Assembly: GCF_039654945.1 (NCBI RefSeq)
Contig: NW_027361830.1
Coordinates: 7,626,001 to 7,690,000 of the forward strand
Source of the DNA: Dendrobates tinctorius
Lineage: Eukaryota
Direction: 5' to 3'
DNA length: 64,000 nucleotides
A program made the position numbers and the translations under genes. This document shows, piece after piece, positions 516 through 60,049 of the stretch. How positions within the stretch are numbered: position 1 is the first letter of the stretch; each line of letters starts with the position of its first letter. Below the pieces are notes generated by a model. The model made no database searches. It was not told the DNA's origin and saw only the letters and a program-made list of their open reading frames with translations.

Positions 516-1446
516 GACAATTTAGGGTGATTACCGTATACGCCTACATATATCTGACCAATTTCTTTCCAATCACACCAACCTCAATCTAAATTGTGTG
601 CAAATTGCTGGTTGATCAGATTTCAGCTTGTCTCATTTGCTAGATAACTGACTTGGCATTTATAAAGATCTGTCTTTCTGAGCTTCTAAACAGACAACTC
701 TCTTGTAGGGGATACAAGGGTACTCAGTAGGATGATCATGAAGGCCTCCATGCACATTAGAAATCTGTCTGATGAACAATGACACCTATCTCCCCCAACT
801 CCCCCTTAGACTTCTGTATTGATGATATTTCAAATGACATATTTTTTTGTCTATGGACTGCCAAAAAATCAGGGCTAGTTGGAAAATATCTCCAGAAAAT
901 TTTCAATTCACACTTCACATTAGGATTTCCCACTTTAAAACTTCTCAATGAATATTCTTGCAGCGCTCACTACAACTTTCTAAATTTGCAGGACCACAGA
1001 ACACTTCTATTTCTAGTGCCTTAAATAAAGTTAATTTTGTTTCAGGCGTTTCGCAGAATACATTTATTTAAGAGTTAACAATCAAGAGAAGCGTGTTTTG
1101 ACGGTGTTTGGTAAACCTATGTTCAGCCTCTGAGAATACCGGTTGTGGTATACACATATATTTCTACTTTCTAAGAAATCGTAAGCTGATAGAACGAGAT
1201 GACTTTTACCACTATCAGGCTTCCTGCAAAGAACTTAAATGCAAAGTTGGTCTTCATTAAAGGAAATGTATTCTGATTCATAGCAGGGTTTACTTTAATT
1301 TTGTCTCTATTAAGTGAAGATATGTTTTGTATCTAAACAGGCACAGCCATACTGGGTTTGTCAGTTTCCACAACTTTTCATGATATAGTTGTATTATCTA
1401 TGGTTTAACCAGACCTCTGGTGAACCTTACGCATCATACAGTATAA

Positions 1447-1851
1447 AGGGGGCTTCACACATAGCGATATCGCTAGCAATATTGCTAAAGTGTCACCGAT
1501 TATGTGACGCAGCAGCGATATTGCTAGCAATATCGCTATATGTGACACTTACCTCCGACCGGCTCCCCCGCTGGCTATCGCTGATCGCGCGAGAACGTCC
1601 TGGGCCGTTTCTCGGCAGCGGCTTCCTGCTGGGATTCCTGCTGGCGCCGACGAGCGACGCGTGGACGCGGGCGGGAGGGCGTCTTCATCGCCACATCTGA
1701 CAGGTAAGTAACGACTGCTGCGTTGCTGCATCGCTAGTAAGATCTGCCTGTTTGGCAGCTCACTAGCGACCATTTAGCAATGCACCAGCGATCCTGACCG
1801 GGTCGTATCGTTGTCGGGATCGCTGGTGCATCGTTAAATGTAACGGGACCC
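1447..1851 (+). mobile_element. PIF/Harbinger-type MITE, family A copy 1
   Basis: Imperfect TIR AGGGGGCTTCACACATAGCGAT / ATCGTTAAATGTAACGGGACCC; TAA on both flanks; homologous to 2472-2846, 5256-5650 and 21197-21558. Confidence 0.8.
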
Positions 1852-2234
1852 TAAGGAAGAGTTATTACATCCTACTCAGCCCAGGTGATATATACTAGTT
1901 GGTTGTGCATCTTCCTATTAAATCTTAAGATCCCAAATGGGGATGAGCAGACCCATGGAAGTTCGGGTTTTGGTACCGATCGAACTTTAGTCCAACTTTA
2001 GTCTCTCACTTCCCCTGGAGCTTCGAACATTAGAATGGACTTCTGTGATAAGTTCTTGTGCTAACTGTTCAGTATGAACCCTGAGCTTTTAAGTTACGGT
2101 TTGCATATCTCTAATCCCAATCTTGCAGCTCTTCCTCTACAAGACAAATTTGGGGAGATTTCATTAAAATTGTATTTTTTGCACATGCAGATAAAGAATC
2201 CTAAAATGGGCCAAATGTATCACACTAGTTTTAG

Positions 2235-2390: not shown

Positions 2391-2471
2391 GCATGCGGGA
2401 GGAAGGAAAGATAGCAATCGGCAGAACTATCTAATGTGAATGGCCATGTATATATCAGTAATTGAGCCTAA

Positions 2472-2846
2472 AGGGGGCTTCACACCTAGCGATATCGCTA
2501 GCAATATCGCTATAACGTCACCGATTTTGTGACGCAGCAGCGATATTGCTAGCGATATCACTATGTGTGATACTTACCTCCGACCGGCTCCCCCGCTGGC
2601 TATCGCTGATCGTGCGAGATCGGCCTGGTCCATTTCTCGGCGTCGGCTTCCTGCTGGCGCCGAAGAGCGAGCCATGGATGCAGGTGGAAGACTGACACCC
2701 TTGCCGCGTCTGAAAGGTAAGTATGACTGCCGACTGCTGCATCGCTAGTGAGATCTGCCTATTTGGCAGCTCACTAGCGACCATTTAGCGATGCACCAGC
2801 AATCCTGACCGGGATCGCTGGTGCATCGCTAAATTTAAAGGGGCCT
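2472..2846 (+). mobile_element. PIF/Harbinger-type MITE, family A copy 2
   Basis: AGGGGGCTTCACAC ... TAAAGGGGCCT termini; flanked by TAA and TTA; high similarity to copy 1. Confidence 0.8.
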
Positions 2847-3058
2847 TTAGGCTCAGTCCACACAGTCTCTCTGCCCACTGCCTGGTGCTCATCCTGAGGA
2901 CGTATGTGCCAGACAGTGTGAACATTGTCTCTTCAGAGAGGATGCAAAGTGTGAGATCTGGTTTGGCTGTGTAAGAGGCGTCTGACCGATATCCAAGAAG
3001 TATCGTTTCTCCTTGCGGAGAATGACATGCTAAGCATGCCGAGATGAGGAGACTTAAA

Positions 3059-3089
3059 GCCGCAATGCTCCTCTGGGAAATATGCAAAT
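3059..3089 (-). promoter_or_regulatory. snRNA-type distal sequence element: octamer plus SPH (Staf/ZNF143)-like motif
   Basis: Minus strand ATTTGCAT-A-TTTCCCAGAGGAGCATTGCG: a perfect octamer (3082-3089) next to a near match to TTCCCAGAATGCATTGCG. Confidence 0.6.
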
Positions 3090-3120
3090 TGTCTCTTCAG
3101 AGAGGAAGAAGACTAGAACT

Positions 3121-3137
3121 CTAGTGCCACCTATTGG
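3121..3137 (-). promoter_or_regulatory. CTCF-like motif inside the retrozyme
   Basis: Minus strand CCAATAGGTGGCACTAG closely matches the CTCF core CCASYAGRKGGCRS. Confidence 0.5.
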
Positions 3138-3216
3138 AAGTAGCAATCCTAAAAGTCATTGTCGACCCTTTAACGAGCCTTGTTACATGACTTAGGATAA
3201 AAGCCAAAACCAGAAT

Positions 3217-3273
3217 CTCAATTTGCAGACACTGTGTTTCGGGGTACTGCCCCTCGTCAGTGCAAAGTGTGAG
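3217..3273 (-). ncRNA. Type I hammerhead ribozyme with canonical core
   Basis: Minus strand reads CUCA-CAC-UUUGCA CUGACGA GGGG CAGUA CCCC GAAA CACAGUG UC / UGCAAA-U-UGAG. All core nucleotides are present. Stem I is 6+4 bp, stem II 4 bp, stem III short and near-palindromic. Predicted cleavage is after GUC, between 3228 and 3227. Confidence 0.92.
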
Positions 3274-4389
3274 GATGATCTCGTCATTCTCCGCAAGGAG
3301 AAATGATACTTCTTGGATATCAGACAGTGTGAACAATCGGTGAATGGTCGCCTATGTTGACGTTACTGTATACGCAGGTAAAAGCTCCTAACCTATACTG
3401 TAGGCTAGGTGCATGGACACGATGTGCAACTAATTTAAATATCTAAAAATAGGGTAGACTCCCACAGAATTCATCAAAAACTGCCCTTGATGGGTTTCTC
3501 AATAAACAATGGAGAAAAAGACAAAACAATATTCTGCTATGCATTATAGTGGGCAGGTTTGAGTACATTCTGTATTACACATTTGCCATGCCTTCTTGCA
3601 TCACCCTGTGTACAGGGGGCACAATGATACCTGCGCGTTGCCAGGTTGCTGGGAGGCAGTACCTTATTAAATAATAGCTGAGATGAAGCGTCACATCTTG
3701 ACAACACTGGAATTTTGACATTTTATTTGGTAAAATATTGATTTAATCCTGTTGCATTAGCTCAGAGCTGTTACACATTTGTTTTCTTTCCAGGTAATGT
3801 TTGCTAAAATGGGGGAAGAAGTAATTTATATTTTAGCCATTAATACAGAAGTAAGGCTTCATTTCCTCATATTGTACTTGCTGACATTTTCCAAGGCATA
3901 TTCATTTTGCATGTTCTTCTTTAAAGGGCAAGTACAGTAACTTTTTCACACAGAAGTTTTTATGAAACCTAAAAACTATAAGCAGCCTCTGAGCTGATTT
4001 TTTTTTTTAATAAATAATGGTAGTGCTAAAAACTCAACTTAATTTTCAAGGATTTTTATTCACAGTCCTGAATAGTTGTAGAAGGAACAAAGAAAAGTAT
4101 GATAATTAACCCAAAAGATATACGGTAAATATGCAAAGCACAATCTATTCTACAGCTTATTCTTACATGATATAACAATGTACATTTGAATAGCATGTGT
4201 CACCAGATCAAAAGTGGCCATTTTTATTTCTCACTTTATTCCTTCAAACCCACTGCGCCACTGAGTTTTTATTTTTTATATCCTACATACGGTTCTAGAG
4301 ATTTTGGACTTTTTACTTAGTACTAATTTTTATGGCCTTTTTCAAGGGAGTGTTGCTCACAGGTTGCCAATGCAGAACACCCTGTAGAA

Positions 4390-5095: not shown

Positions 5096-5255
5096 CAATA
5101 GACGATGGAACAACTACATTTACAAGAAAGGCAAAGGGAAAAATATGGATATTCTTCTGAAGCAAATCATAAAACCAAATATTGGCTTAACCCTCCAAGT
5201 ATGATGTCCAGGGAGCTCATACCTTATCACTCCTAGATTGGGCAATATAGCATAA

Positions 5256-5650
5256 GGGTACCTTTACACCTAGCGATGCACCAGCGATCCCGACCAGCGA
5301 TATGACACGGTCAGGATCGCTGGTGCATCGCTAAGTGGTCGCTAGTGAGCTGCCACACAGGCAGATCTCACCAGCGACATCGCTGGGGACGGGGATTGCT
5401 ACTTACCTGTCAGACGCGGCGATTCTGGCGTCCTCCCGCCCGGCTCCACGCGTCGCTCGTCGGCGCCACAGGAAGCGCCCGACGAGAAATGATCCAGGAG
5501 CTTCTCGAGCGATCAGCGATAATCAGCGGGGGAGCCGGTCGGAGGTAAGTATCACATGCAGCGATATCGCTAGCAATATCGCTGCAACGTCACAAAATCG
5601 GTGACTTTACAGCGATATTGCTAGCGATATCGCAGTGTGTAACGGGGGCT
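5256..5650 (-). mobile_element. PIF/Harbinger-type MITE, family A copy 3
   Basis: Reverse orientation relative to copies 1 and 2; TAA on both flanks. Confidence 0.8.
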
Positions 5651-6733: not shown

Positions 6734-8361
6734 CAGTGGGGCAAAAAAGTATTTAGTCAGTCAGCAATAGTGCAAGTTCCACCACTTAAAAAGATGAGAG
6801 GCGTCTGTAATTTACATCATACGTAGACCTCAACTATGGGAGACAAACTGAGAAAAAAAAAATCCAGAAAATCACATTGTCTGTTTTTTTTTTCATTTTA
6901 TTTGCATATTATGGTGGAAAATAAGTATTTGGTCAGTGGAAAATAAGTATTTGGTCAGAAACAAGCAATCAAGATTTCTGGCTCTCACAGACCTGTAACT
7001 TCTTCTTTAAGAGTCTCCTCTTTCCTCCACTCATTACCTGTAGTAATGGCATCTGTTTAAACTTGTTATCAGTATAAAAAGACACCTGTGCACACCCTCA
7101 AACAGTCTGACTCCAAACTCCACTATGGTGAAGACCAAAGAGCTGTCAAAGGACACCAGAAACAAAATTGTAGCCCTGCACCAGGCTGGGAAGACTGAAT
7201 CTGCAATAGCCAACCAGCTTGGAGTGAAGAAATCAACTGTGGGAGCAATAATTAGAAAATGGAAGACATACAAGACCACTGATAATCTCCCTCGATCTGG
7301 TGCTCCACGCAAAATCCCACCCCGTGGGGTCAGAATGATCACAAGAACGGTGAGCAAAAATCCCAGAACCACGCGGGGGGACCTAGTGAATGAACTGCAG
7401 AGAGCTGGGACCAATGTAACAAGGCCTACCATAAGTAACACACTACGCCACCATGGACTCAGATCCTGCAGTGCCAGACGTGTCCCACTGCTTAAGCCTG
7501 TACATGTCCGGGCCCGTCTGAAGTTTGCTAGAGAGCATTTGGATGATCCAGAGGAGTTTTGGGAGAATGTCCTATGGTCTGATGAAACCAAACTGGAACT
7601 GTTTGATAGAAACACAACTTGTCGTGTTTGGAGGAAAAAGAATACTGAGTTGCATCCATCAAACACCATACTTACTGTAAAGCATGGTGGTGGAAACATC
7701 ATGCTTTGGGTCTGTTTCTCTGAAAAGGGGCCAGGACGACTGATCCGGGTACATGAAAGAATGAATGGGGCCATGTATCGTGAGATTTTGAGTGCAAACC
7801 TCCTTCCATCAGCAAGGGCATTGATGATGAAACGTGGCTGGGTCTTTCAACATGACAATGATCCAAAGCACACCGCCAGGGCAATGAAGGAGTGGCTTCG
7901 TAAGAAGCATTTCAAGGTCCTGGAGTGGCCTAGCCAGTCTCCAGATCTCAACCCTATAGAAAACCTTTGGAGAGAGTTGAAAGTCCGTGTTGCCAAGCGA
8001 AAAGCCAAAAACCTCACTGCTCTAGAGGAGATCTGCATGGAGGAATGGGCCAACATACCAACAACAGTGTGTGGCAACCTTGTGAAGACTTACAGAAAAC
8101 GTTTGACCTCTGTCATTGCCAACAAAGGATATATCACAAAGTATTGAGATGAAATTTTGTTTCTGACCAAATACTTATTTGCCACCATAATATGCAAATA
8201 AAATGAAAAAAAAACAGACAATGTGATTTTCTGGATTTTTTTTTCTGTTTGTCTCCCATAGTTGAGGTCTACCTATGATGTAAATTACAGACGCCTCTCA
8301 TCTTTTTAAGTGGTGGAATTTGCACTATTGCTGACTGACTAAATACTTTTTTGCCCCACTG
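6734..8361 (+). mobile_element. Full-length Tc1/mariner DD34E transposon with long IR/DR TIRs
   Basis: TA|CAGTGGGGCAAAAAAGTATTTAGTCAG ... CTGACTAAATACTTTTTTGCCCCACTG|TA; ~200-bp TIRs; TA TSD. Confidence 0.97.
7125..8147 (+). CDS. Tc1-like transposase, 340 aa, open reading frame
   Basis: Paired-like HTH N-terminus with RSGAPRK; [20 protein letters not shown] and [15 protein letters not shown] motifs; 34 residues between the second D and E. Confidence 0.95.
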
Positions 8362-19837: not shown

Positions 19838-21196
19838 TAAAGAGATTTCAACTAATCACTTGTCTAAACATGAGACACAAATTAATTACAGTAGACTACT
19901 CTTGTCAGTGGCCACTAATTCATATATTTACTGTAATATCAATTTAATATTTAGCACCACTCCATTCATTAACCGCACAGAAAGGCTGACAATAGTACCC
20001 TCTATGTCATATTGAGCAATCTCGACAACAAAGCTAATTGGTTTCCTTTCCAGTGACCTTTTTTTCTGTCAATTAAATTACTTCTGGCTAAGTAGTGCAG
20101 GGAATTGATAAAATCGCTTTATATTCAATATGGTCATGGCAGTGGTTGCTAATGCTGCCTGTTTTCCATATATATATTATAAACATTTGTATCAGTTTGT
20201 GGCTGGAATTCCCCTATCTTAGTTATTCATTTTGTTCATTTGTTTTGTATTTTTTTTTCTGATAAATCAGCTTTTTTCATTTGTGTAATCTTGAAACTAG
20301 AAAGAGAGTAATAAAATTAGCGGTTGGGTTCGGCTGGAAAGTCCCTCATCTTTCTGAATTTCTTTACTACTTACTGGATATTCTTTGTGTGTACATTTAT
20401 GGCACTTAAAAGGTAAATGGCAGTATAAAACAGTAAAAAAAAAAAAACATTTATTTTTAAAATTTCCTAATAATGGATATCAAAATAAAACTATATATAC
20501 CCATAAAGAAGTGGATGCATAAATAGTCACTGGCCCCTTGCCTATTCTTCTCTCTGCACTTGAACTAATGCACCTGAAAATGTACAAATATTTCATTACC
20601 TGAAAAAGGTCATATCGGTTTTATTGGGCTACATCCATATTTGTTCTTTCATGTACCACTATTTCATAAAGCACGTGAAGTGGAAAAAAGTTGACAAAAA
20701 TTATACCAGAGAAACGGTCTTTTTAGCTCCTAATTTTTATATATGAATTGCCAGTGTAATTGTGTCTCCAGATTGTGATGATTATGTCCATTGTTATTGA
20801 TCAATGTGATATTCCTCACTGGCTGTGGCTATTTTTAAAAAGAAAAAAAAAATTTCTACAGATCTCAGTAAAAAAATATTCACGCTTATTTATACATGCA
20901 AGTGTGCAATTGTGGATAAAGTAATGACATTCATGCCATAATCATTCGCTATATTTACCAAGCCTGGCTCCATTTTTTTAATTTTTAATTTCCGCATGTA
21001 TAAGTGACGGTGAGCTATGACAAATTAGCCCTGTCTTGGCTTCTGTTGCTTTTTTTCTGCACTGGGAGTGGGAGTTTTCGTTCATCTGATGGCAATTTCT
21101 TTATGGTCTAGATGTAGAACTAGGAACAAGAATAGAGTTTTATGGTTTTACAAGAGTTGTTGCGAATTGATAACCAGAACCTGGCCCATCGGCTAA

Positions 21197-21558
21197 AGGC
21201 CCCTTTACATTTAGCGATGCACCAGCGATCCGACCCGGTCAGGATCGCTGGTGCATCGCTAAATGATCGCTAGTGAGCTGTCACACAAGCAGACCTAACA
21301 GCGATGCAGCAGCGACGCAGCGCATGATACTCACCTTTCACACACAGCGATCCTGATGTCCTCCCGCCTGCCTCCACACGTCGCTCGTCGTCACAGCAGG
21401 AAGCTGACGACGAGAAATGGAGCCGGACATTCTCGCACGATCAGCAATGGACAGCCGGTCGGAGGGAAGTATCACACATAGCGATATCGCTATAATGTCA
21501 CAAAATCGGTGACGATATAGCGATATCGCTAGCGATATCGCTATGTGTAAAACCCCCT
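21197..21558 (-). mobile_element. PIF/Harbinger-type MITE, family A copy 4
   Basis: TAA|AGGCCCCTTTACAT ... TGTGTAAAACCCCCT|TAA. Confidence 0.85.
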
Positions 21559-22802
21559 TAAGTCCTTAAACTGCGTCTGCTGGATGGGAGCCCTAAGAGC
21601 TGCCTCTTCTTTTGAATAGCTGGTCTGGTGCGCCATCACATGTACATCACATCGTAATGCTTGTGTTGAGCCAGGCTGGGTAATCAGAAGACGATATGGT
21701 GGATGCTGTCAGGTAAGAGACGGTCCTTTTGGCTCCCATCAGAGGCCAGAGATTAATGAACTGGCCAATGGACCCGCCACTGAGAACTGATTCACATCAA
21801 CTCTAGTTATTACCATGTATGCACTCAGGAGCTAACTGCTCCCCAGCCAGCCAACTTCATGATTGCTGGGGGATAGGCACTCAAGATTGATGGTTCAGAC
21901 CAGTAACATTGTTACCCCATTGACCTGAACAGTGTGTTCCTGATGATACTAGAAGATGCTGCATTGGAAGTTACTAAAGCTGGCCAGAGTCAGGAGCCAA
22001 CGGTACTCTCTAACGATTCCACCCAGCTTCATTGTGTAAGCAGTGCACATGCTTGGTCACTGCTGTATACTGGCAGCGGATGATGGTAATCTAGGCAAAA
22101 AAGAATGCTGTTAACAATGACAAAAAATCAACAATCACAGGAATAGAGCAGAATTTTAATAAATAGTAAAAAGTAAAAATTAAAAGTTCTATTTTCAAGC
22201 ACTATTCAACGATACACATCAATGCAAAGTGAAATAATACTTTCGTAATAGTGGTTATGATTGCATTAAAAAATAAATTGAAATATGCATGGAAATGGGG
22301 TAAACTATATATTGTGAAAATGAAATTTATTCAATGTAGCTTAAGTCATATCCTTGATTGAAGATGCCTGAAGATTTCCTCTTATAAATTATTCTCTGTT
22401 TTCAAGGATGTATATGTCTAAACATTTCCGCTCACAAAATATATTGATGATCCCAAAGTGGTTGAAAACATAGGCCATTAAAAGCATTAAAGACTACTGT
22501 GGTCTATAAGTGCTCTGGCAGGAGGATAATCTCTCCGCCGAGCAATTTGTTGAAAGCATATTTGCTTGATTTTAGACATCCGTAATTTTAGATTGAATGT
22601 GTGTGCAATTTGGGTGTAACACCAACCAGAATAATCTGCTCCGACAAACTAGACTAGAAGGCATGTATCCTAACAGCTTAGTTCTGCATTAGTAAGAACG
22701 CCAAAATACAGAGATGAAAGGACTAAAAAAGGTAAGCCGACGGTTTAAAATTGACATGCAAACGCTTAAGATGGGTTTACCCTGGTCGACTTGTGGCTTT
22801 AA

Positions 22803-46553: not shown

Positions 46554-49500
46554 TTAGGTTAATGTGTTGAGGCGATAGGCCAGTCTGAATAAATGCGTTT
46601 TTAGGGCACGCTTAAAATTGTGGGGATTGGGGACTAATCGTATTGATCTGGGAAGTGCATTCCAAAGAATTGGCGTGGCACGTGTAAAGTCTTGGAGACG
46701 GGAGTGGGAGTTTCTGACTATTGAGGATACCAACCTCAGGTCATCAGCAGAACGGAGGGCGCGGGTAGGGTGGTATACTGAAACAAGGGAGGAGATGTAG
46801 GGTGGTGCTGAGCCATGGAGGGCTTTGTGGGTGAGGGTAATTAGTTTATACTGAATTCTGGAGTGGATGGGTAGCCAGTGTAATGACTGGCACAAGGTAG
46901 AGGCATCGGTGTAACGATTGGTGAGGAATATGATCCTGGCTGCAGCATTCAAGACAGATTGGAGAGGGGAGAGTTTGGTAAGAGGGAGACCGATTTGAAG
47001 AGAGTTACAATAGTCGAGACGAGAATGAATAAGAGAAACAGTAAGAGTTTTTGCAGACTCAAAAGTAAGAAAAGGTCGAATTCTAGAAATGTTTTTGAGG
47101 TGCAGATGACAAGAGCGAGCCAGTGATCGAATGTGGGGGACAAAGGAAAGCTCGGAATCAAGTATGACCCCAAGACAGCGGGCCTGTTGCTGGGGAGTAA
47201 TAGTGGAACCACACACAGAAATAGCAATGTCGGGTATAGGTACATTAGTAGAGGGAGGAAACACCAGGAGTTCAGTCTTTGACAGGTTCAGTTTCAGATA
47301 TAGTAAGGACATGATATTAGACACAGCGTTTAGACCAGTGGTCCCCAACCTTTTTTGCACCAGGGACCGGCTTGAACCAAGACCATTCTTCCATGGCCCG
47401 GCAGGGCGGGGATGGAGGAGTGACAGGGGCGGGGCTTTGGTCATAAGGGGGCGGGGCTATGGACGCGGTTGTAGTTTAGCAGTGCATATTTATCATTTAA
47501 TTATAACATTTTTAATGTGACTCAACTCACCATAGGTTTTGAATGAGTGGGAGCACCTGGCTTGTTTCTGTTTCAGTGGGAGCACTGGGCTACTTCTACT
47601 GATGACCGTCACTGCTAATGATGATTGGAACCTACAAGGAAATGGAGCATTGAGCACTTAAGAACAATTGTACTGGAGTACTGTACATGCTGATTATTTT
47701 CTAATCATCAGAAAATGTATGTGTGGTCCCCCCCATCCAGCTCTGTGTGGCTCCCCCTGTTGTATGCATGGCTCCCCTGTCCCATCCTGTATACATGGCT
47801 CTGCTCCCACTCTCCCATCCTGTATACATGGCTCCGCTCCCATCCTCCCATCCTGTATGCATGTCTCTGCTCCCATCCTTGTATACATGGCTCCGCTCCC
47901 ACCCTCCCATCCTGTATACATGGCTCTGCTCCCACTCTCCCATCCTGTATACATGGCTCCGCTCCCACTCTCCCATCCTGTATGCATGGCTCTGCTCCCA
48001 CTCTTCTATCCTGTATACATGGCTCCCCTGTCCCATCCTGTATGCATGGCTCCGCTTCCACTCTCCCTCCCTTGTATATATGGCTCTGCTTCCACTCTCC
48101 CTCCCTTGTATATATGGCTCCGCTCCCATTCTTCCTCCCCTGTGTATATGGCTCCGCTCCCACTCTCCCTCCCTTGTATATATGGCTCCGCTCCCACTCT
48201 CCCTCCCCTGTGTATATGGCTCTGCTCCCACTCTCCCTCCCTTGTATATATGGCTCCGCTCCCATTCTCCCTCCCGTATATATGGCTCCGCTCCCACTCT
48301 CCCTCCCTTGTATATATGGCTCTGCTTCCACTCTCCCTCCCCTGTGTATATGGCTCCGCTCGCACTCTCCCTCCCCTGTGTATATGGCTCCGCTCCCATT
48401 CTCCCTCCCCTGTGTATATGGCTCCGCTCCCACTCTCCCTCCCTTGTATATATGGCTCCGCTCCCATTCTCCCTCCCCTGTGTATATGGCTCCGCTCCCA
48501 TTCTCCCTCCCCTGTGTATATGGCTCCGCTCCCACTCTCCCTCCCTCATATATATATATATATGGCTCCGCTCCCAGTCTCCCGGCCTCCCTTGTATATA
48601 TGGCTCCGCTCCCAGTCTCCCGGCCTCCCCTGTATATATGGCTCTGCTCCCATTCTCCCTCCCCTGTATATATGGCTCCGCTCCCACTCTCCCTCCCCTG
48701 TATATATGGCTCCGCTCCCAGTCTCCCGGCCTCCCTTGTATATATGGCTCCGCTCCCATTCTCCCTCCCCTGTGTATATGGCTCCGCTCCCATTCTCCCT
48801 CCCCTGTGTATATGGCTCCGCTCCCACTCTCTCTCCCTTATATTTATGGCTCTGCTTGCCTCCCCCATCCTCCCCATCATACTTACCCTCACGTCGCTGA
48901 ACTTCCTTCCCGTCGCTGCACGTCCCTGCATCTCGCGGCGCTTCAGCTTCTTCCTGTGCGGAGCGGTCACGTGCTACCGCTCATTAAGGCCCATGAATAT
49001 GGACGCCACGCCTATGGGAGAGGAGTGGCGTCCATATTCATGACCTTTAATGAGTGGTAGCACGTGACCGCTCAGCGCTGGATGAAGCCGCCGCTGGATG
49101 AAGCCGCCGTGGGATGCAGGGTGAGTATCAGCTGCTGCACCGCCCCCCGGCTCCCCTTGTGTCCGCGGACCGGCAAGGGCACTGCAACGGCCCGGTGCTG
49201 GGCCGCGGACCGGCGGTTGGGGACCCCTGGTTTAGACAATCGCCGGTGTTTTCTAGAAAGGTTGGCGTGATGTCAGGAGAAGAAGCGTATAATTGGGTGT
49301 CATCAGCATAGAGATGGTACTGGAAACCAAATCTACTGATTGTTTGACCAATAGGGGCAGTGTACAAGGAGAAGAGGAGGGGGCCTAGAACCGATCCTTG
49401 GAGGACCCCAACAGTAAGGGGAAGGTGAGAGGAGGAGGAACCGGCAAAAGATAGAGTAAAGGAGCGGTCGGAGAGATAGGAGGAGAACCAGGAGAGAACG

Positions 49501-51500
49501 GTGTCCTTGAGGCCAATGGAACAGAGCATAGTGAGGAGGAGCTGATGATCCACAGTGTCGAATGCTGCAGAGAGATCCAAGAGAATTAGCATGGAGTAAT
49601 GACCATTTGATTTAGCTATTAGCAGATCATTAGAGACTTTAGTGAGGGCAGTTTCAGTGGAGTGTAAAGAGCGAAAACCGGATTGGAGAGGGTCGAGAAC
49701 AGAGTTTTCTGAGAGATAGCGGATAAGACGGGAGTGGACCAGGCGTTCCAGGAGTTTAGAGATGAAGGGAAGATTAGAGACAGGTCTATAGTTAGCGGCA
49801 CAGTTTTGGTCGAGGGATGGTTTTTTAAGTAGTGGATGTATGATGGCATGCTTAAATGAGGAGGGAAAAATACCAGAAGAGAGAGAGAGGTTAAATATTT
49901 TAGTTAGGTGAGGGGTCACAGCAGGAGAAAGGGACTGGAGGAGATGTGACGGAAATGGGTCACTGGTGCAAGTAGTTGGGCGAGAAGATGCAAGGAGCCT
50001 GCTTACTTCTTCTTCTGTGACTGGTTCAAAATCAGAGAGTGAGCTAGATGCAGTGGGGGAGGGAGGACAGTGCATGGTATGAGGGGATTGGGAGATAATT
50101 TCCTGTCGAATCTGGTCAATTTTTTCTTTGAAGTAATAGGCCAGATCGTCAGCTCGGAGCTCCGTGGTTGGGGCCTGTACTCTTGGATTGAGTAGAGAAT
50201 GAAAAGTGTCAAAGAGACGTTTCGGGTTATTGGACAGTGAGGTGATGAGGGTGTTGAAATAGGTTTGTTTGGAGAGGTGAAGGGCAGTGTTGTATGTTCT
50301 AAGCATAAACTTAAAATGGATGAAATCTTCGTGTAGATTGGATTTTCTCCACAGACGTTCGGCGCACCTGGAGCACCGCTGCAGGAAACGTGTTTGCACC
50401 GTGTGACAGGGTTGTCGCCATCTGCGTTGTGGTGTTCTATTTATAGGGGGTGCAAATTCATCCAGGGCACTTTGAAGTGTTTCATTGTAATGCTTCAATG
50501 CAGAATCAGGACATGAGAGGGAGGAGATAGGGGCCAATGAAGACTGCAAGTTCTTCATAAGTTTCTGGGTGTTAATGGCCTGTATGTTTCTATAAGTCTG
50601 GACAGTGGAGGTGACCTGAGCAGCCTGGCAGTTCTTTAAAGAGAATGAAAGAAGATTGTGGTCAGAGAGCGGGAGAGGGGAGTTTGCAAAATCATCCACT
50701 GCACAAAGCCGAGAGAAGACCAAGTCGAGGGAGTTTCCGTCTTCATGCGTTGGAGAATTAGTAAGCTGCGAAAGGCCAAACGAGGAGGTTAGAGATAAAA
50801 GGCGAGTAGCAGATGGTGAGAGGGGAAGAGCAATGGGGATGTTGAAATCTCCCATGATGAGGGTAGGGATGTCACATGAGAGAAAATGTGGAAGCCAAGT
50901 GGCAAAATGATCCAGGAACTGATGGGAGGGGCCAGGAGGACGATACACCACCGCCACTCGCATGGAGAAGGGGGTGTAGAGTCTGACGGCATGGACCTCA
51001 AAAGAAGGGAAGACAAGTGAGGGTACTTGAGGGATAACCTGAAAGGTACATTTTGGTGATAGGAGCAGACCAACGCCTCCACCAGCTCTACTGTCTGATC
51101 TTGGGGTATGAGAGAAGTGTAGCCCCCCGTATGAAAGAGCAGCAGCAGCGGTAGTGTCTGACTGCTGGATCCAGGTTTCAGTAAGAGCCAGGAGGTTAAG
51201 AGAATTAGAAAGGAAGAAGTCATGGATGAAGGAGAGTTTGTTACACACTGAGCGAGAATTCCAAAGTGCACAATTAAGAGAGACAGATGGCAGGCAGGGA
51301 AAATTAATAAGATTAGAGGGGTTTCTAAGTGTAGCAGTCGGGGGGTTTGACTTTCTATAAAATGGGGGACCAGGGTTGGGAGCAATGTCTCCTGCGACTA
51401 GGAGAAGGAGGATAGAAAGAGTGAGCAGATGGTTAAGTGATTTGTAAGAGCATCTCTGATGTTGAATGGAGGGACTGACTGGATCTGTGCAATTTAACAA
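46554..51500 (-). CDS. LINE ORF2 (APE endonuclease + reverse transcriptase), interrupted by the hAT insertion at 47336-49229
   Basis: [74 protein letters not shown]. Removing the insert and one TSD rejoins the frame as GDCLNAVS. Confidence 0.92.
47336..49229. mobile_element. Non-autonomous hAT (Charlie-like) element
   Basis: TIR CAGTGGTCCCCAACC / GGTTGGGGACCCCTG; perfect 8-bp TSD GTTTAGAC. Confidence 0.93.
47740..48870. repeat. 33-35 bp minisatellite, roughly 30 or more copies
   Basis: Unit GGCTCCGCTCCCACTCTCCCTCCCTTGTATATAT and variants. Confidence 0.95.
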
Positions 51501-58924: not shown

Positions 58925-59446
58925 AGCCCCCGTTACACATAACGATGTCCCAGCGATCCCAACAATGATCCGACATGATGGGATCGCTGGGACATCGTTA
59001 GTCTGATCGCTGGTGAACTGTCACATAGACAGCCCCAGCGATCAGGACCAGTGACATTGGATGCTGGTTTCTAATGTTAACATCGGGTATCCAGGAGCCG
59101 TGGCTCCTAGATACCCGCTGTTTACCTTGGAAACCAGCGTACACGCTGGTTTCCAAGGTAAACATCGGGTATCTAAGAGCCGCGCGACTCCTGGATACCC
59201 GATGTTTACATTAGAAACCAGCGTCGCTGATCCCTGGATTCTCGCTGCCACACGCAGCGATGCGGGCTGGCCAGCGGGAGACCAGCGATCGAATAATGAT
59301 CCAGTCCGATGCTGCACGATCAGCGATACCCGGCAGGGGGGCCGGTCACTGATCCCCGTCACACACAGCGATCTCGCTGGCGAGATCACTGTGGCGTCAC
59401 AAAATCAGCGATCTTGCTAGCGAGATCGCTGTGTGTGACGGGGCCT
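58925..59446 (-). mobile_element. Harbinger-type MITE, longer relative of family A
   Basis: TTA|AGCCCCCGTTACAC ... GTGTGACGGGGCCT|TTA; internal palindrome centred near 59140. Confidence 0.85.
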
Positions 59447-60049
59447 TTAGTCCTTATTTGGTCTCTCAAAGTATGTTTTCTCTGAAATGCCACAGTGTTT
59501 CAGAGTAAAGCATGCATGGCAGCAATAACACGAGTGGTGTTTAATACATACAGCCCATGGTTCAATCAGCATGACATGTTCCCTTTAAATTCAAACTGCT
59601 AAGTCCCCAACAGGTAAAAATCACTAGGCCATCATTTACATTAGATGACTACCCCAGTGAAATCTGTGTGTTCAGTTGGTTTTAATGTGTTTGGGGCTAT
59701 ACCCATAGCGCCCAACCACCCTTGAATGTTTCTGTCCCAATTTCAGGGCTCAGAACCACCGTCCTGGCACTTCAAGGCTTTGTCCCTGGTCTATTACTCA
59801 CCCCTCTTAAATTTCCTCATTACTCTGTAGCTCCTCAGAGGGTAGGGCTGCATATCTCTGCATTGACATAAATTAGAATGTTCACACCACTTCTCCTGTG
59901 ATCGGGCCTTTTTGAGACTCAAACTCGCATCTCCATGTTCTGAGGTAGCAGCTTTAGCTAGGAGCCACAGTCCACAATGATGTACATTTAAGAATTTGGT
60001 AATCTTGAAATGTATTGCCGGCAGTGAACTCACAAGTAGATTATACATA

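What the first reader, a model, noticed from the sequence alone, without database searches (positions are those of the whole stretch)
2910..3335. Self-cleaving, possibly self-transcribing retrozyme: 318-nt monomer with a canonical hammerhead
Seen in sequence: a non-coding insert with a perfect 15-bp TSD; a 13-nt terminal redundancy (2943 and 3261) defining a 318-nt circularly permuted unit; and a minus-strand type I hammerhead with every core nucleotide intact, an extended stem I with an internal loop, and a tiny near-palindromic stem III (ACAC-A-GUGU). Established: small hammerhead repeats of this size (newt/axolotl satellite 2, non-LTR retrozymes) give monomeric and circular RNAs, and hammerheads with a minimal stem III typically cleave as dimers. 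Inference: this is a young dispersed retrozyme in an apparently anuran genome, copied from a multimeric or circular RNA. It is the best candidate here for an undescribed system; I cannot check whether this family is already catalogued.
Basis: partly seen in the sequence, partly recalled or inferred. Interest (0 to 1): 0.9.

Follow-up and report, generated by a model that had tools for sequence, protein, structure and literature searches.

The report
Frog hammerhead retrozyme, single dispersed copy
This is one dispersed, probably inert copy of a very abundant 318-base frog repeat that carries a hammerhead self-cutting RNA motif; it is real and cleanly inserted, but repeats of this kind ("non-LTR retrozymes") are already described in amphibians, frogs included.

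Summary
A 396-nt non-coding insert (2925-3320) lies between perfect 15-bp target duplications. It holds just over one 318-nt unit and, on the minus strand, a type I hammerhead with an intact core that would cut between 3228 and 3227.

Public runs of at least three related organisms hold this unit at very high depth against unique flanks. They also hold the exact head-to-tail joint 3260->2943, so the 318-nt unit exists in tandem or circular form.

In RNA sense, the 5' end of the insert is a 38-nt antisense copy of the unit, and the 3' end is an 18-nt copy of an internal stretch. Both resemble the complex tandem/inverted insertions of Penelope-like elements (PLEs).

It is a retrozyme, but not an undescribed system. 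Cervera & de la Peña (2020) and Li et al. (2026) describe such repeats in all amphibians they sampled, with a mean consensus of 316 bp. This scan already holds 132 notes on hammerhead retrozymes in this genome, including a 317-bp unit.

Cleavage, circles and self-transcription remain untested. This locus has a single hammerhead with an unstable helix III, so it is probably a dead-end copy. I rate it a new member of a known kind, of low to moderate interest.

The parts
2910..2924 (.). Left copy of the 15-bp target-site duplication, CAGACAGTGTGAACA
   Evidence: single-copy depth
2925..2942 (-). 3' terminal 18 nt of the insert in RNA sense. It is an exact direct copy of the internal stretch 3089-3106 (unit positions u122-139) and is not contiguous with what follows in the canonical unit.
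2943..3260 (-). One complete 318-nt retrozyme unit, circularly permuted. It is non-coding, with the longest ATG ORF at 37 aa. Folded as a circle it gives -100.5 kcal/mol, z = -4.3, 63% paired.
   Evidence: (joint 3260->2943 'goes back 318' in X1, X5, X15)
3082..3089 (+). Octamer ATGCAAAT, the kind of motif found in the distal element of snRNA-type promoters. It abuts the point where the 18-nt terminal copy begins. Function untested.
   Evidence: about 0.01 expected by chance per unit (my estimate)
3222..3266 (-). Type I hammerhead ribozyme motif, with predicted cleavage between 3228 (C17) and 3227
3261..3273 (-). 13-nt terminal redundancy (identical to 2943-2955). It forms the 5' strand of helix I.
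   Evidence: loose ends at 3273 in family contigs continue as 2956 onward
3274..3282 (-). 9-nt junction, gagatcatc in RNA sense, with no clear source
3283..3320 (+). 38-nt inverted (antisense) copy of unit positions u202-239 (2989-3026), 37/38 identical, at the 5' end of the insert in RNA sense
3321..3335 (.). Right copy of the 15-bp target-site duplication

Best explanation
This is a dispersed, single-hammerhead copy of an abundant 318-nt non-LTR retrozyme family of frogs.

Shown:
- The family exists at very high copy number in several related species, also as head-to-tail units.
- This copy is a 396-nt insert with a 15-bp target duplication.
- It carries a complete canonical metazoan type I hammerhead: helix I of 6 bp plus an internal loop, helix II of 4 bp, and a short palindromic helix III.

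Inferred:
- Family RNA is transcribed from tandem arrays, cut by pairs of hammerheads acting as a double hammerhead, and ligated into about 318-nt circles.
- An RNA that spanned the cut site (a circle, or an uncut transcript of more than one unit) was reverse-transcribed at a staggered chromosomal break by the enzyme of an autonomous retroelement, most likely a Penelope-like element.
- Both target 3' ends seem to have primed on retrozyme RNA. The plus-strand end started at u139 and gave the main copy. The minus-strand end started at u239 and gave the 38-nt inverted piece. This is twin priming, equivalent to the 'inverted 5'-truncated copy' typical of PLE insertions.

The locus itself, with one hammerhead and an unstable helix III, is probably an inert end product.
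For: - Target duplication and insert edges.
- Hammerhead: all 45 model positions, core identical to the consensus; 1 match against 0.05 expected.
- Abundance and other species: the insert bins reach about 1e5-9e5 summed depth against about 5-8 on the unique flank, in X1 (the source organism) and X5. X15 shows about 3e3-4e4 against about 6. X19, a second run labelled organism A, shows about 2e2-1e3 against no flank cover. That is three organism labels.
- Head-to-tail joint 3260->2943 with a 13-nt overlap: 4, 5 and 4 contigs in X1, X5 and X15. Loose ends at 3273 continue as the unit.
- The unit is non-coding with no tRNA and is highly self-paired as a circle, z = -4.3.
- Need for a dimer: the catalytic fold of the monomer is -12.3 against an MFE of -16.2 kcal/mol, in which CACUG pairs with CAGUG. 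The helix III hairpin scores 0.0, and the duplex of two helix III strands scores -8.4.
- Architecture matches the 'canonical' metazoan type I hammerhead as defined in PMC4209133. It differs from the minimal hammerheads of PLE pseudo-LTRs (pLTRs), which have helix II of 7-8 bp and no helix III.
- PLE-style scars: inverted piece, terminal extension and a long target duplication, set against the descriptions in PMC8557442 and PMC11167929.
- Class already described in amphibians, mean consensus 316 bp.
Against: - No cleavage, circle or transcript has been shown for this family. All runs were assembled contigs, and the 'RNA' label of X15 and X19 is a guess.
- The Rfam score is below the gathering score.
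- In Xenopus only 1 of 9 retrozyme dimers cleaved in vitro, so an intact motif does not guarantee activity.
- Some family contigs carry hammerhead variants with a mismatch at the base of helix II (table 5c).
- The mobilising enzyme is inferred from scars at one locus. No PLE was seen among the six longest ORFs of the window, and microhomologies of 4/6 and 5/7 are weak.
- The jump from u122 to u285 and the 9-nt junction are unexplained.
- An empty site in related species could not be shown. Contigs of X5 and X15 stop matching at 3339.
Confidence: 0.75

Rival explanations
1. The unit is simply the pseudo-LTR of an autonomous Penelope-like element, and this locus is a severely 5'-truncated PLE insertion rather than an independent non-autonomous retrozyme.
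For: PLE insertions are mostly 5'-truncated, carry hammerheads in their pLTRs and show inverted pieces and tails. Li et al. find that nearly every Xenopus retrozyme family is sister to a PLE pLTR.
Against: Contigs in three organisms join unit to unit directly at 318-nt spacing, with no coding region between. The hammerhead is of the canonical retrozyme type, with helix I of 6 bp, helix II of 4 bp and a palindromic helix III. It is not the minimal type reported for PLE pLTRs. No similarity to anything else in the window, and no PLE among the ORFs scanned there.
Confidence: 0.12
2. The template was not a circle. It was a linear, promoter-defined transcript slightly longer than one unit, starting near u268-273 and ending at u285. 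Its source would be an internal snRNA-type promoter, as reported for newt satellite 2. The 13-nt redundancy would then mark the two RNA ends, and the cDNA would have jumped onto the 3' end of that RNA.
For: The sense segment begins and ends within 13-18 nt of the same unit position. The junction u122->u285 shows no homology, as expected for an end-to-end template jump. The octamer ATGCAAAT lies in the unit. Newt satellite 2 is cited as having an snRNA-type pol II promoter (Coats 1994, as cited in PMC2220036).
Against: This is one locus only. Just over one turn on a circular template gives the same product. No proximal element or start site was identified, no RNA ends are available, and the Coats paper could not be read here.
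Confidence: 0.15
3. A piece of satellite DNA was captured at the DNA level, for example as filler at a double-strand break or by reintegration of an extrachromosomal circle. No reverse transcription would be involved.
For: The patchwork of short direct and inverted pieces resembles filler DNA. Tandem arrays could shed circles of unit length.
Against: A perfect 15-bp target duplication indicates a staggered cut that was filled in, as in target-primed insertion. The extra pieces start exactly at both target ends, with microhomology to the RNA sense strand. The scan's notes report many other copies with target duplications of 12-15 bp (unchecked).
Confidence: 0.04

Closest known systems
Non-LTR retrozymes of amphibians (axolotl Rtz331/Rtz353; Xenopus families such as REP4). 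Cervera & de la Peña 2020, PMC7229834; Li, Clavereau & Pollet 2026, bioRxiv 10.64898/2026.07.22.740005
   Same: Unit size (318 nt against about 330-350 in axolotl and a mean of 316 in Amphibia). Non-coding, GC below 50% (46%). One canonical type I hammerhead per unit with a weak palindromic helix III. Present as tandem units and as dispersed monomers. A long target duplication. A highly self-paired predicted circle.
   Different: Sequence similarity to those families outside the hammerhead core was not tested, because no reference sequences were on hand. RNA circles and cleavage are shown for axolotl but not for this family. This copy carries extra inverted and direct end pieces.
Newt satellite 2 (Epstein & Gall 1987; Forster et al. 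1988; Coats et al. 1994), as cited in PMC7229834 and PMC2220036
   Same: A unit of about 330 bp with a type I hammerhead that needs a double-hammerhead conformation. An internal promoter of snRNA type is reported for the newt, and an octamer is present here.
   Different: The newt repeat was described as a satellite, whereas this is a dispersed copy with a target duplication. Promoter function and transcript ends here are unknown.
Pseudo-LTRs of Penelope-like elements with minimal hammerheads (Cervera & de la Peña 2014, PMC4209133; Craig et al. 2021, PMC8557442; Frangieh et al. 2024, PMC11167929)
   Same: Insertion style: a terminal extension, an adjacent inverted truncated piece, partial tandem structure, and initiation of copying inside the RNA at a site with little homology to the target.
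   Different: No RT/GIY-YIG coding region. The hammerhead is canonical (helix II 4 bp, helix III present), not the minimal PLE type (helix II 7-8 bp, no helix III). The 18-nt end piece is not contiguous with its neighbour in the unit, unlike a PLE 'tail'.

Membership tests
Hammerhead ribozyme, type I (Rfam RF00163) | Conserved core C3 U4 G5 A6 N7 G8 A9 ... G12 A13 A14, A15.1-U16.1 pair, H17 at the cut site | tested here: met
   CUGACGAG ... CGAAAC ... GUC, identical to the consensus at every core position. C17 is at 3228.
Hammerhead ribozyme, type I (Rfam RF00163) | Three helices around the core, with helix I open-ended | tested here: met
   helix I is 6 bp, a 3x1 internal loop, then 4 bp. Helix II is 4 bp with a 5-nt loop. 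Helix III is 3 bp with a 3-nt loop and is unstable on its own.
Hammerhead ribozyme, type I (Rfam RF00163) | Score at or above the curated gathering score (34 bits) | tested here: not met
   25.5 bits, and nothing at gathering. The short helices limit the score, so this is an operational cut-off and not a structural feature. By my scaling of the E-value, about one chance hit of this score is expected per several Gb.
Hammerhead ribozyme, type I (Rfam RF00163) | Self-cleavage | not testable with these tools
   Needs in vitro transcription of monomer and dimer. Only 1 of 9 Xenopus retrozyme dimers cleaved in Li et al..
Metazoan non-LTR retrozyme | Small (about 170-400 nt) non-coding repeat with one type I hammerhead per unit and no LTR, PBS or PPT | tested here: met
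   318-nt unit. Longest ATG ORF is 37 aa. No tRNA-like part. One hammerhead.
Metazoan non-LTR retrozyme | Multi-copy, occurring as tandem units | tested here: met
   depth about 1e5 against about 5 on the flank, and the joint 3260->2943 (318 nt back) in contigs of three organisms.
Metazoan non-LTR retrozyme | Target duplications longer than the 4 bp of plant LTR retrozymes; GC below 50% | tested here: met
   15-bp duplication. Unit GC is 0.456.
Metazoan non-LTR retrozyme | Expressed as linear and circular RNAs of unit length | tested here: inconclusive
   Unit and head-to-tail joints are present in X15 and X19, which are only guessed to be RNA and are kept as contigs. No ends, strand or circularity can be read from them.
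Penelope-like element (autonomous) | ORF with PLE-type RT and GIY-YIG endonuclease between pLTRs | tested here: not met
   No ORF in the insert. Of the six longest ORFs of the window, Pfam named only a Tc1-type transposase and a LINE-type APE+RT.
PLE-mobilised insertion (works like) | Complex tandem/inverted ends, a terminal extension, and internal initiation with little target homology | tested here: inconclusive
   The 38-nt inverted piece, the 18-nt end piece and weak microhomologies are present and fit the descriptions. This is a single locus, and the end piece is not a contiguous 'tail'.

The most novel reading that the evidence does not exclude
The ends of this insert record the transposition intermediate. 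That intermediate would be a capped, linear, terminally redundant transcript of about 331-338 nt, made from a promoter inside the unit, and not a ribozyme-made circle. It would have been copied by twin priming from both ends of a staggered PLE-type cut. If general, the hammerhead would be dispensable for retrozyme mobility in frogs, and the 13-nt redundancy would play an R-like role.
Probability: 0.12. Interest if true: 0.55.

Novelty: new member of a known kind. Interest (0 to 1): 0.25.

Why it matters
This is a clean, datable example of how hammerhead retrozymes land in a frog genome. The intact target duplication and the pieces primed from both target ends add single-locus support to the published hypothesis that Penelope-like elements mobilise animal retrozymes. 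The locus also shows that default Rfam searches miss this hammerhead. It does not reveal a new system. The family-level questions (does it cleave, does it circularise, what transcribes it) are the same ones already open for amphibian retrozymes.

Tried and rejected
- Rfam at gathering on the whole window, and at E <= 10 on 651 nt, found no hammerhead. Only the 96-nt search did. The other weak Rfam matches (CRISPR-DR57, mir-246, mir-1271) are chance hits on the inverted repeat and flanks.
- Self-BLAST of the insert against the window found no other copy of the family in the 64 kb.
- Exact scans for the hammerhead core plus helix II found nothing in viral contigs. They found three metagenome contigs, L001-L003, that share only 25-28 nt and look like bacterial or phage hammerheads. 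These gave no help for a family alignment, so no covariation test or covariance model could be made.
- Search of the scan's findings by sequence was blank.
- Coats et al. 1994 on the newt promoter could not be fetched, so no proximal-element consensus was compared.
- Empty site: contigs of organisms B and G cover the right flank only from 3339 and then run into unlike sequence. No contig at 88% likeness or more covers 2896-2939 in those runs. Presence or absence of the insert in relatives is therefore undecided.
- A SINE or tRNA origin is rejected, and a coding function is rejected.
- Snap-back priming for the inverted piece is rejected, because the two arms lie 256 nt apart.

Full report
**What is in the sequence**

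The stretch 2925-3320 (396 nt) is bracketed by two perfect copies of CAGACAGTGTGAACA, at 2910-2924 and 3321-3335. A 15/15 direct repeat in a 900-nt region is expected about 4e-4 times by chance (my estimate). Its inner edges also coincide with a jump in public-run depth from single-copy to about 1e5. This is a true insertion with a target-site duplication.

**The hammerhead**

On the minus strand, 3266..3222 reads UUUGCA-CUGACGA-G GGG CAGUA CCC C-GAA-ACACAGUGU-C|UGCAAA.

- Given 96 nt, Rfam Hammerhead_1 aligns all 45 model positions at 25.5 bits, E = 1e-4, and every core nucleotide equals the consensus.
- The score is below the curated 34 bits.
- The filters dropped the match in both larger searches, so a routine Rfam pass would miss it.
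- The core descriptor occurs once in the window against 0.05 expected.
- Helix I is 6 bp, then a 3x1 internal loop and 4 more pairs. Helix II is 4 bp. Helix III is at best 3 bp around a 3-nt loop.
- This is the 'canonical metazoan type I' architecture defined by Cervera & de la Peña (PMC4209133). It is unlike the minimal hammerheads of PLE pseudo-LTRs (pLTRs), which have helix II of 7-8 bp and no helix III.

Energetics:

| Structure | kcal/mol |
|---|---|
| Helix III hairpin alone | 0.0 |
| Two helix III strands paired | -8.4 |
| Catalytic fold of a single motif | -12.3 |
| Alternative fold that sequesters C3-G5 | -16.2 |

These values fit the double-hammerhead requirement shown for newt and axolotl (Forster 1988; PMC7229834).

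**Is it a family?**

The window holds no second copy. Public runs show the family is real. Runs labelled with at least seven organisms hold part of the stretch. I laid four of them, carrying three organism labels.

Laying the contigs of four runs on 2500-3800 gave these results:

- The insert bins had summed depths of about 1e5-9e5 in X1 (source organism A) and X5 (organism B). The unique right flank had about 5-8.
- X15 (organism G) showed about 3e3-4e4 over the insert against about 6 on the flank. X19, a second run of organism A, showed about 2e2-1e3 against no flank cover.
- The joint '3260 -> 2943, goes back 318' with a 13-nt overlap was present in 4, 5 and 4 contigs of X1, X5 and X15.
- Contigs that end their fit at 3273 continue with the sequence that follows 2955.

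The 318-nt unit therefore exists head-to-tail, as tandem DNA and/or multimeric or circular RNA, in several related frogs.

This copy differs from nearly all family contigs at 2973, 3110 and 3159, and from a majority at 3005 and 3039. Within the hammerhead match (3222-3266), only the helix III loop position 3233 was listed as variable, but 16 variant rows were not shown.

The unit is non-coding, with its longest ATG ORF at 37 aa, and has no tRNA-like part. It is 46% GC. Folded as a circle it gives -100.5 kcal/mol, z = -4.3 against dinucleotide shuffles, 63% paired, with helix I extended to about 27 nt per strand.

**Anatomy this finding's text does not cover**

I number the unit from the cut site: u1 = 3227, u285 = 2943, and u286-318 = 3260..3228. 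The insert then reads, in RNA sense, as follows:

1. 3320..3283: an antisense copy of u202-239, 37/38 identical.
2. 3282..3274: 9 nt of unclear origin.
3. 3273..2943: u273-318 plus u1-285, which is 331 nt or 1.04 units.
4. 2942..2925: u122-139, 18/18 identical.

The plus-strand target end (...TGAACA-3') abuts the copy of u139, and the RNA just 3' of u139 would read TGCAAA on that strand (4/6 match). The minus-strand target end (...CTGTCTG-3') abuts the antisense piece, where a templated continuation would read CTGACCG (5/7 match).

The simplest reading is that both 3' ends of a 15-bp staggered break primed cDNA on sense retrozyme RNA. This is twin priming, and it yields a main copy plus a short inverted 5' piece.

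Craig et al. describe PLE insertions as 5'-truncated partial tandems. These often carry an adjacent inverted truncated copy and a 30-40-bp extension at one end (PMC8557442). Frangieh et al. show a PLE RT initiating inside its RNA at sites not homologous to the target (PMC11167929).

The scars here fit that style. It is one locus, the microhomologies are weak, and the jump u122->u285 and the 9-nt junction remain unexplained (note).

**How it most likely works**

Shown: an abundant 318-nt hammerhead unit exists in tandem form, and this locus is a retro-style insertion of just over one unit that spans the cut site.

Inferred from the published biology of the class (PMC7229834):

- Arrays are transcribed.
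- Neighbouring hammerheads pair through helix III and cut.
- A host ligase circularises the monomers.
- A circle or an uncut multimer is copied into DNA by a PLE enzyme.

This locus has one hammerhead only. It cannot release a unit-length RNA, and it cannot form an intramolecular double hammerhead. It is best seen as a dead-end monomer, the kind Li et al. call offspring that could not transpose.

**Self-transcription**

The unit contains a perfect octamer ATGCAAAT at 3082-3089, with about 0.01 expected by chance. Newt satellite 2 is cited as having an snRNA-type promoter (PMC2220036). I could not read the original paper, identified no proximal element, and had no raw RNA reads. The claim stays an inference.

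A variant worth testing follows from this. The sense segment's ends (u268-273 and u285) may be the ends of a promoter-defined, terminally redundant linear transcript rather than the trace of a circle.

**Comparison with what is known**

Cervera & de la Peña (2020) defined metazoan non-LTR retrozymes. These are 170-400 nt with type I hammerheads, occur in tandem, have longer target duplications and GC below 50%, and form linear and circular RNAs. Those authors showed dimer-dependent cleavage for two axolotl families of 331 and 353 nt.

Li, Clavereau & Pollet (2026 preprint) found such elements in all seven Amphibia sampled, with a mean consensus of 316 bp. They report 57 families in Xenopus, most of them sister to PLE pLTRs, and only 1 of 9 Xenopus dimers cleaved in vitro.

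The present element meets every sequence-level criterion of that class. Expression as circles could not be tested.

It is not a PLE, since it has no ORF. None of the six ORFs scanned in the window is a PLE. Its hammerhead is not of the PLE minimal type.

This scan already holds 132 notes on hammerhead retrozymes in this genome, including a 317-bp unit and a two-armed 352-nt insertion that an earlier follow-up judged ordinary. I treat those notes as leads, not as evidence.

**Verdict**

- The retrozyme reading is supported.
- 'Undescribed system' is not supported.
- 'Self-cleaving' and 'self-transcribing' are untested.
- Novelty: a new member of a known kind, assuming the family is not already in Dfam or Repbase, which I could not check.
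- Interest: 0.25.

I did not verify it.

Noticed in passing
window 2463-2855: A MITE-like palindromic repeat of about 390 bp with imperfect 31-nt terminal inverted repeats lies just upstream of the insertion site. Four more copies sit in the window (1444-1856, 5249-5633, 21193-21562, 59270-59450; about 71-81% identical). Its summed contig depth in public runs reaches about 2e6, far above the retrozyme.
   Followed up: partly
window 7125-8147 (+) and 49128-51500 (-): An ORF with Tc1/Sleeping-Beauty-type transposase domains and an ORF with LINE-type endonuclease plus reverse transcriptase domains. None of the six ORFs scanned in the window is a Penelope-like ORF.
   Followed up: no
L001:233-257, L002:1577-1601, L003:48-72: Three metagenome contigs carry the same hammerhead core plus helix II string (CTGAYGAGGGGCAGYACCCCGAAAC) a short distance upstream of a Shine-Dalgarno-like site and an ATG. 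They are unrelated to the frog unit outside those 25-28 nt. They are probably bacterial or phage hammerheads with a convergent helix II.
   Followed up: partly
window 3339-3712: In run X15 (241 million letters, guessed to be RNA, a related organism) a 512-nt contig covers this unique right flank at depth 5.7. That depth is unlikely for single-copy DNA at that sequencing volume, so the flank may be transcribed there. The contig's other 138 nt do not match the insert.
   Followed up: no
window 3005 vs 3304: The only mismatch between the 38-nt inverted piece and the body of the unit is at 3005. The body has G. The inverted piece carries the complement of A, which is the majority letter of the family in all four runs. 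This is either a later mutation or a sign that the two pieces were copied from different RNA molecules.
   Followed up: partly
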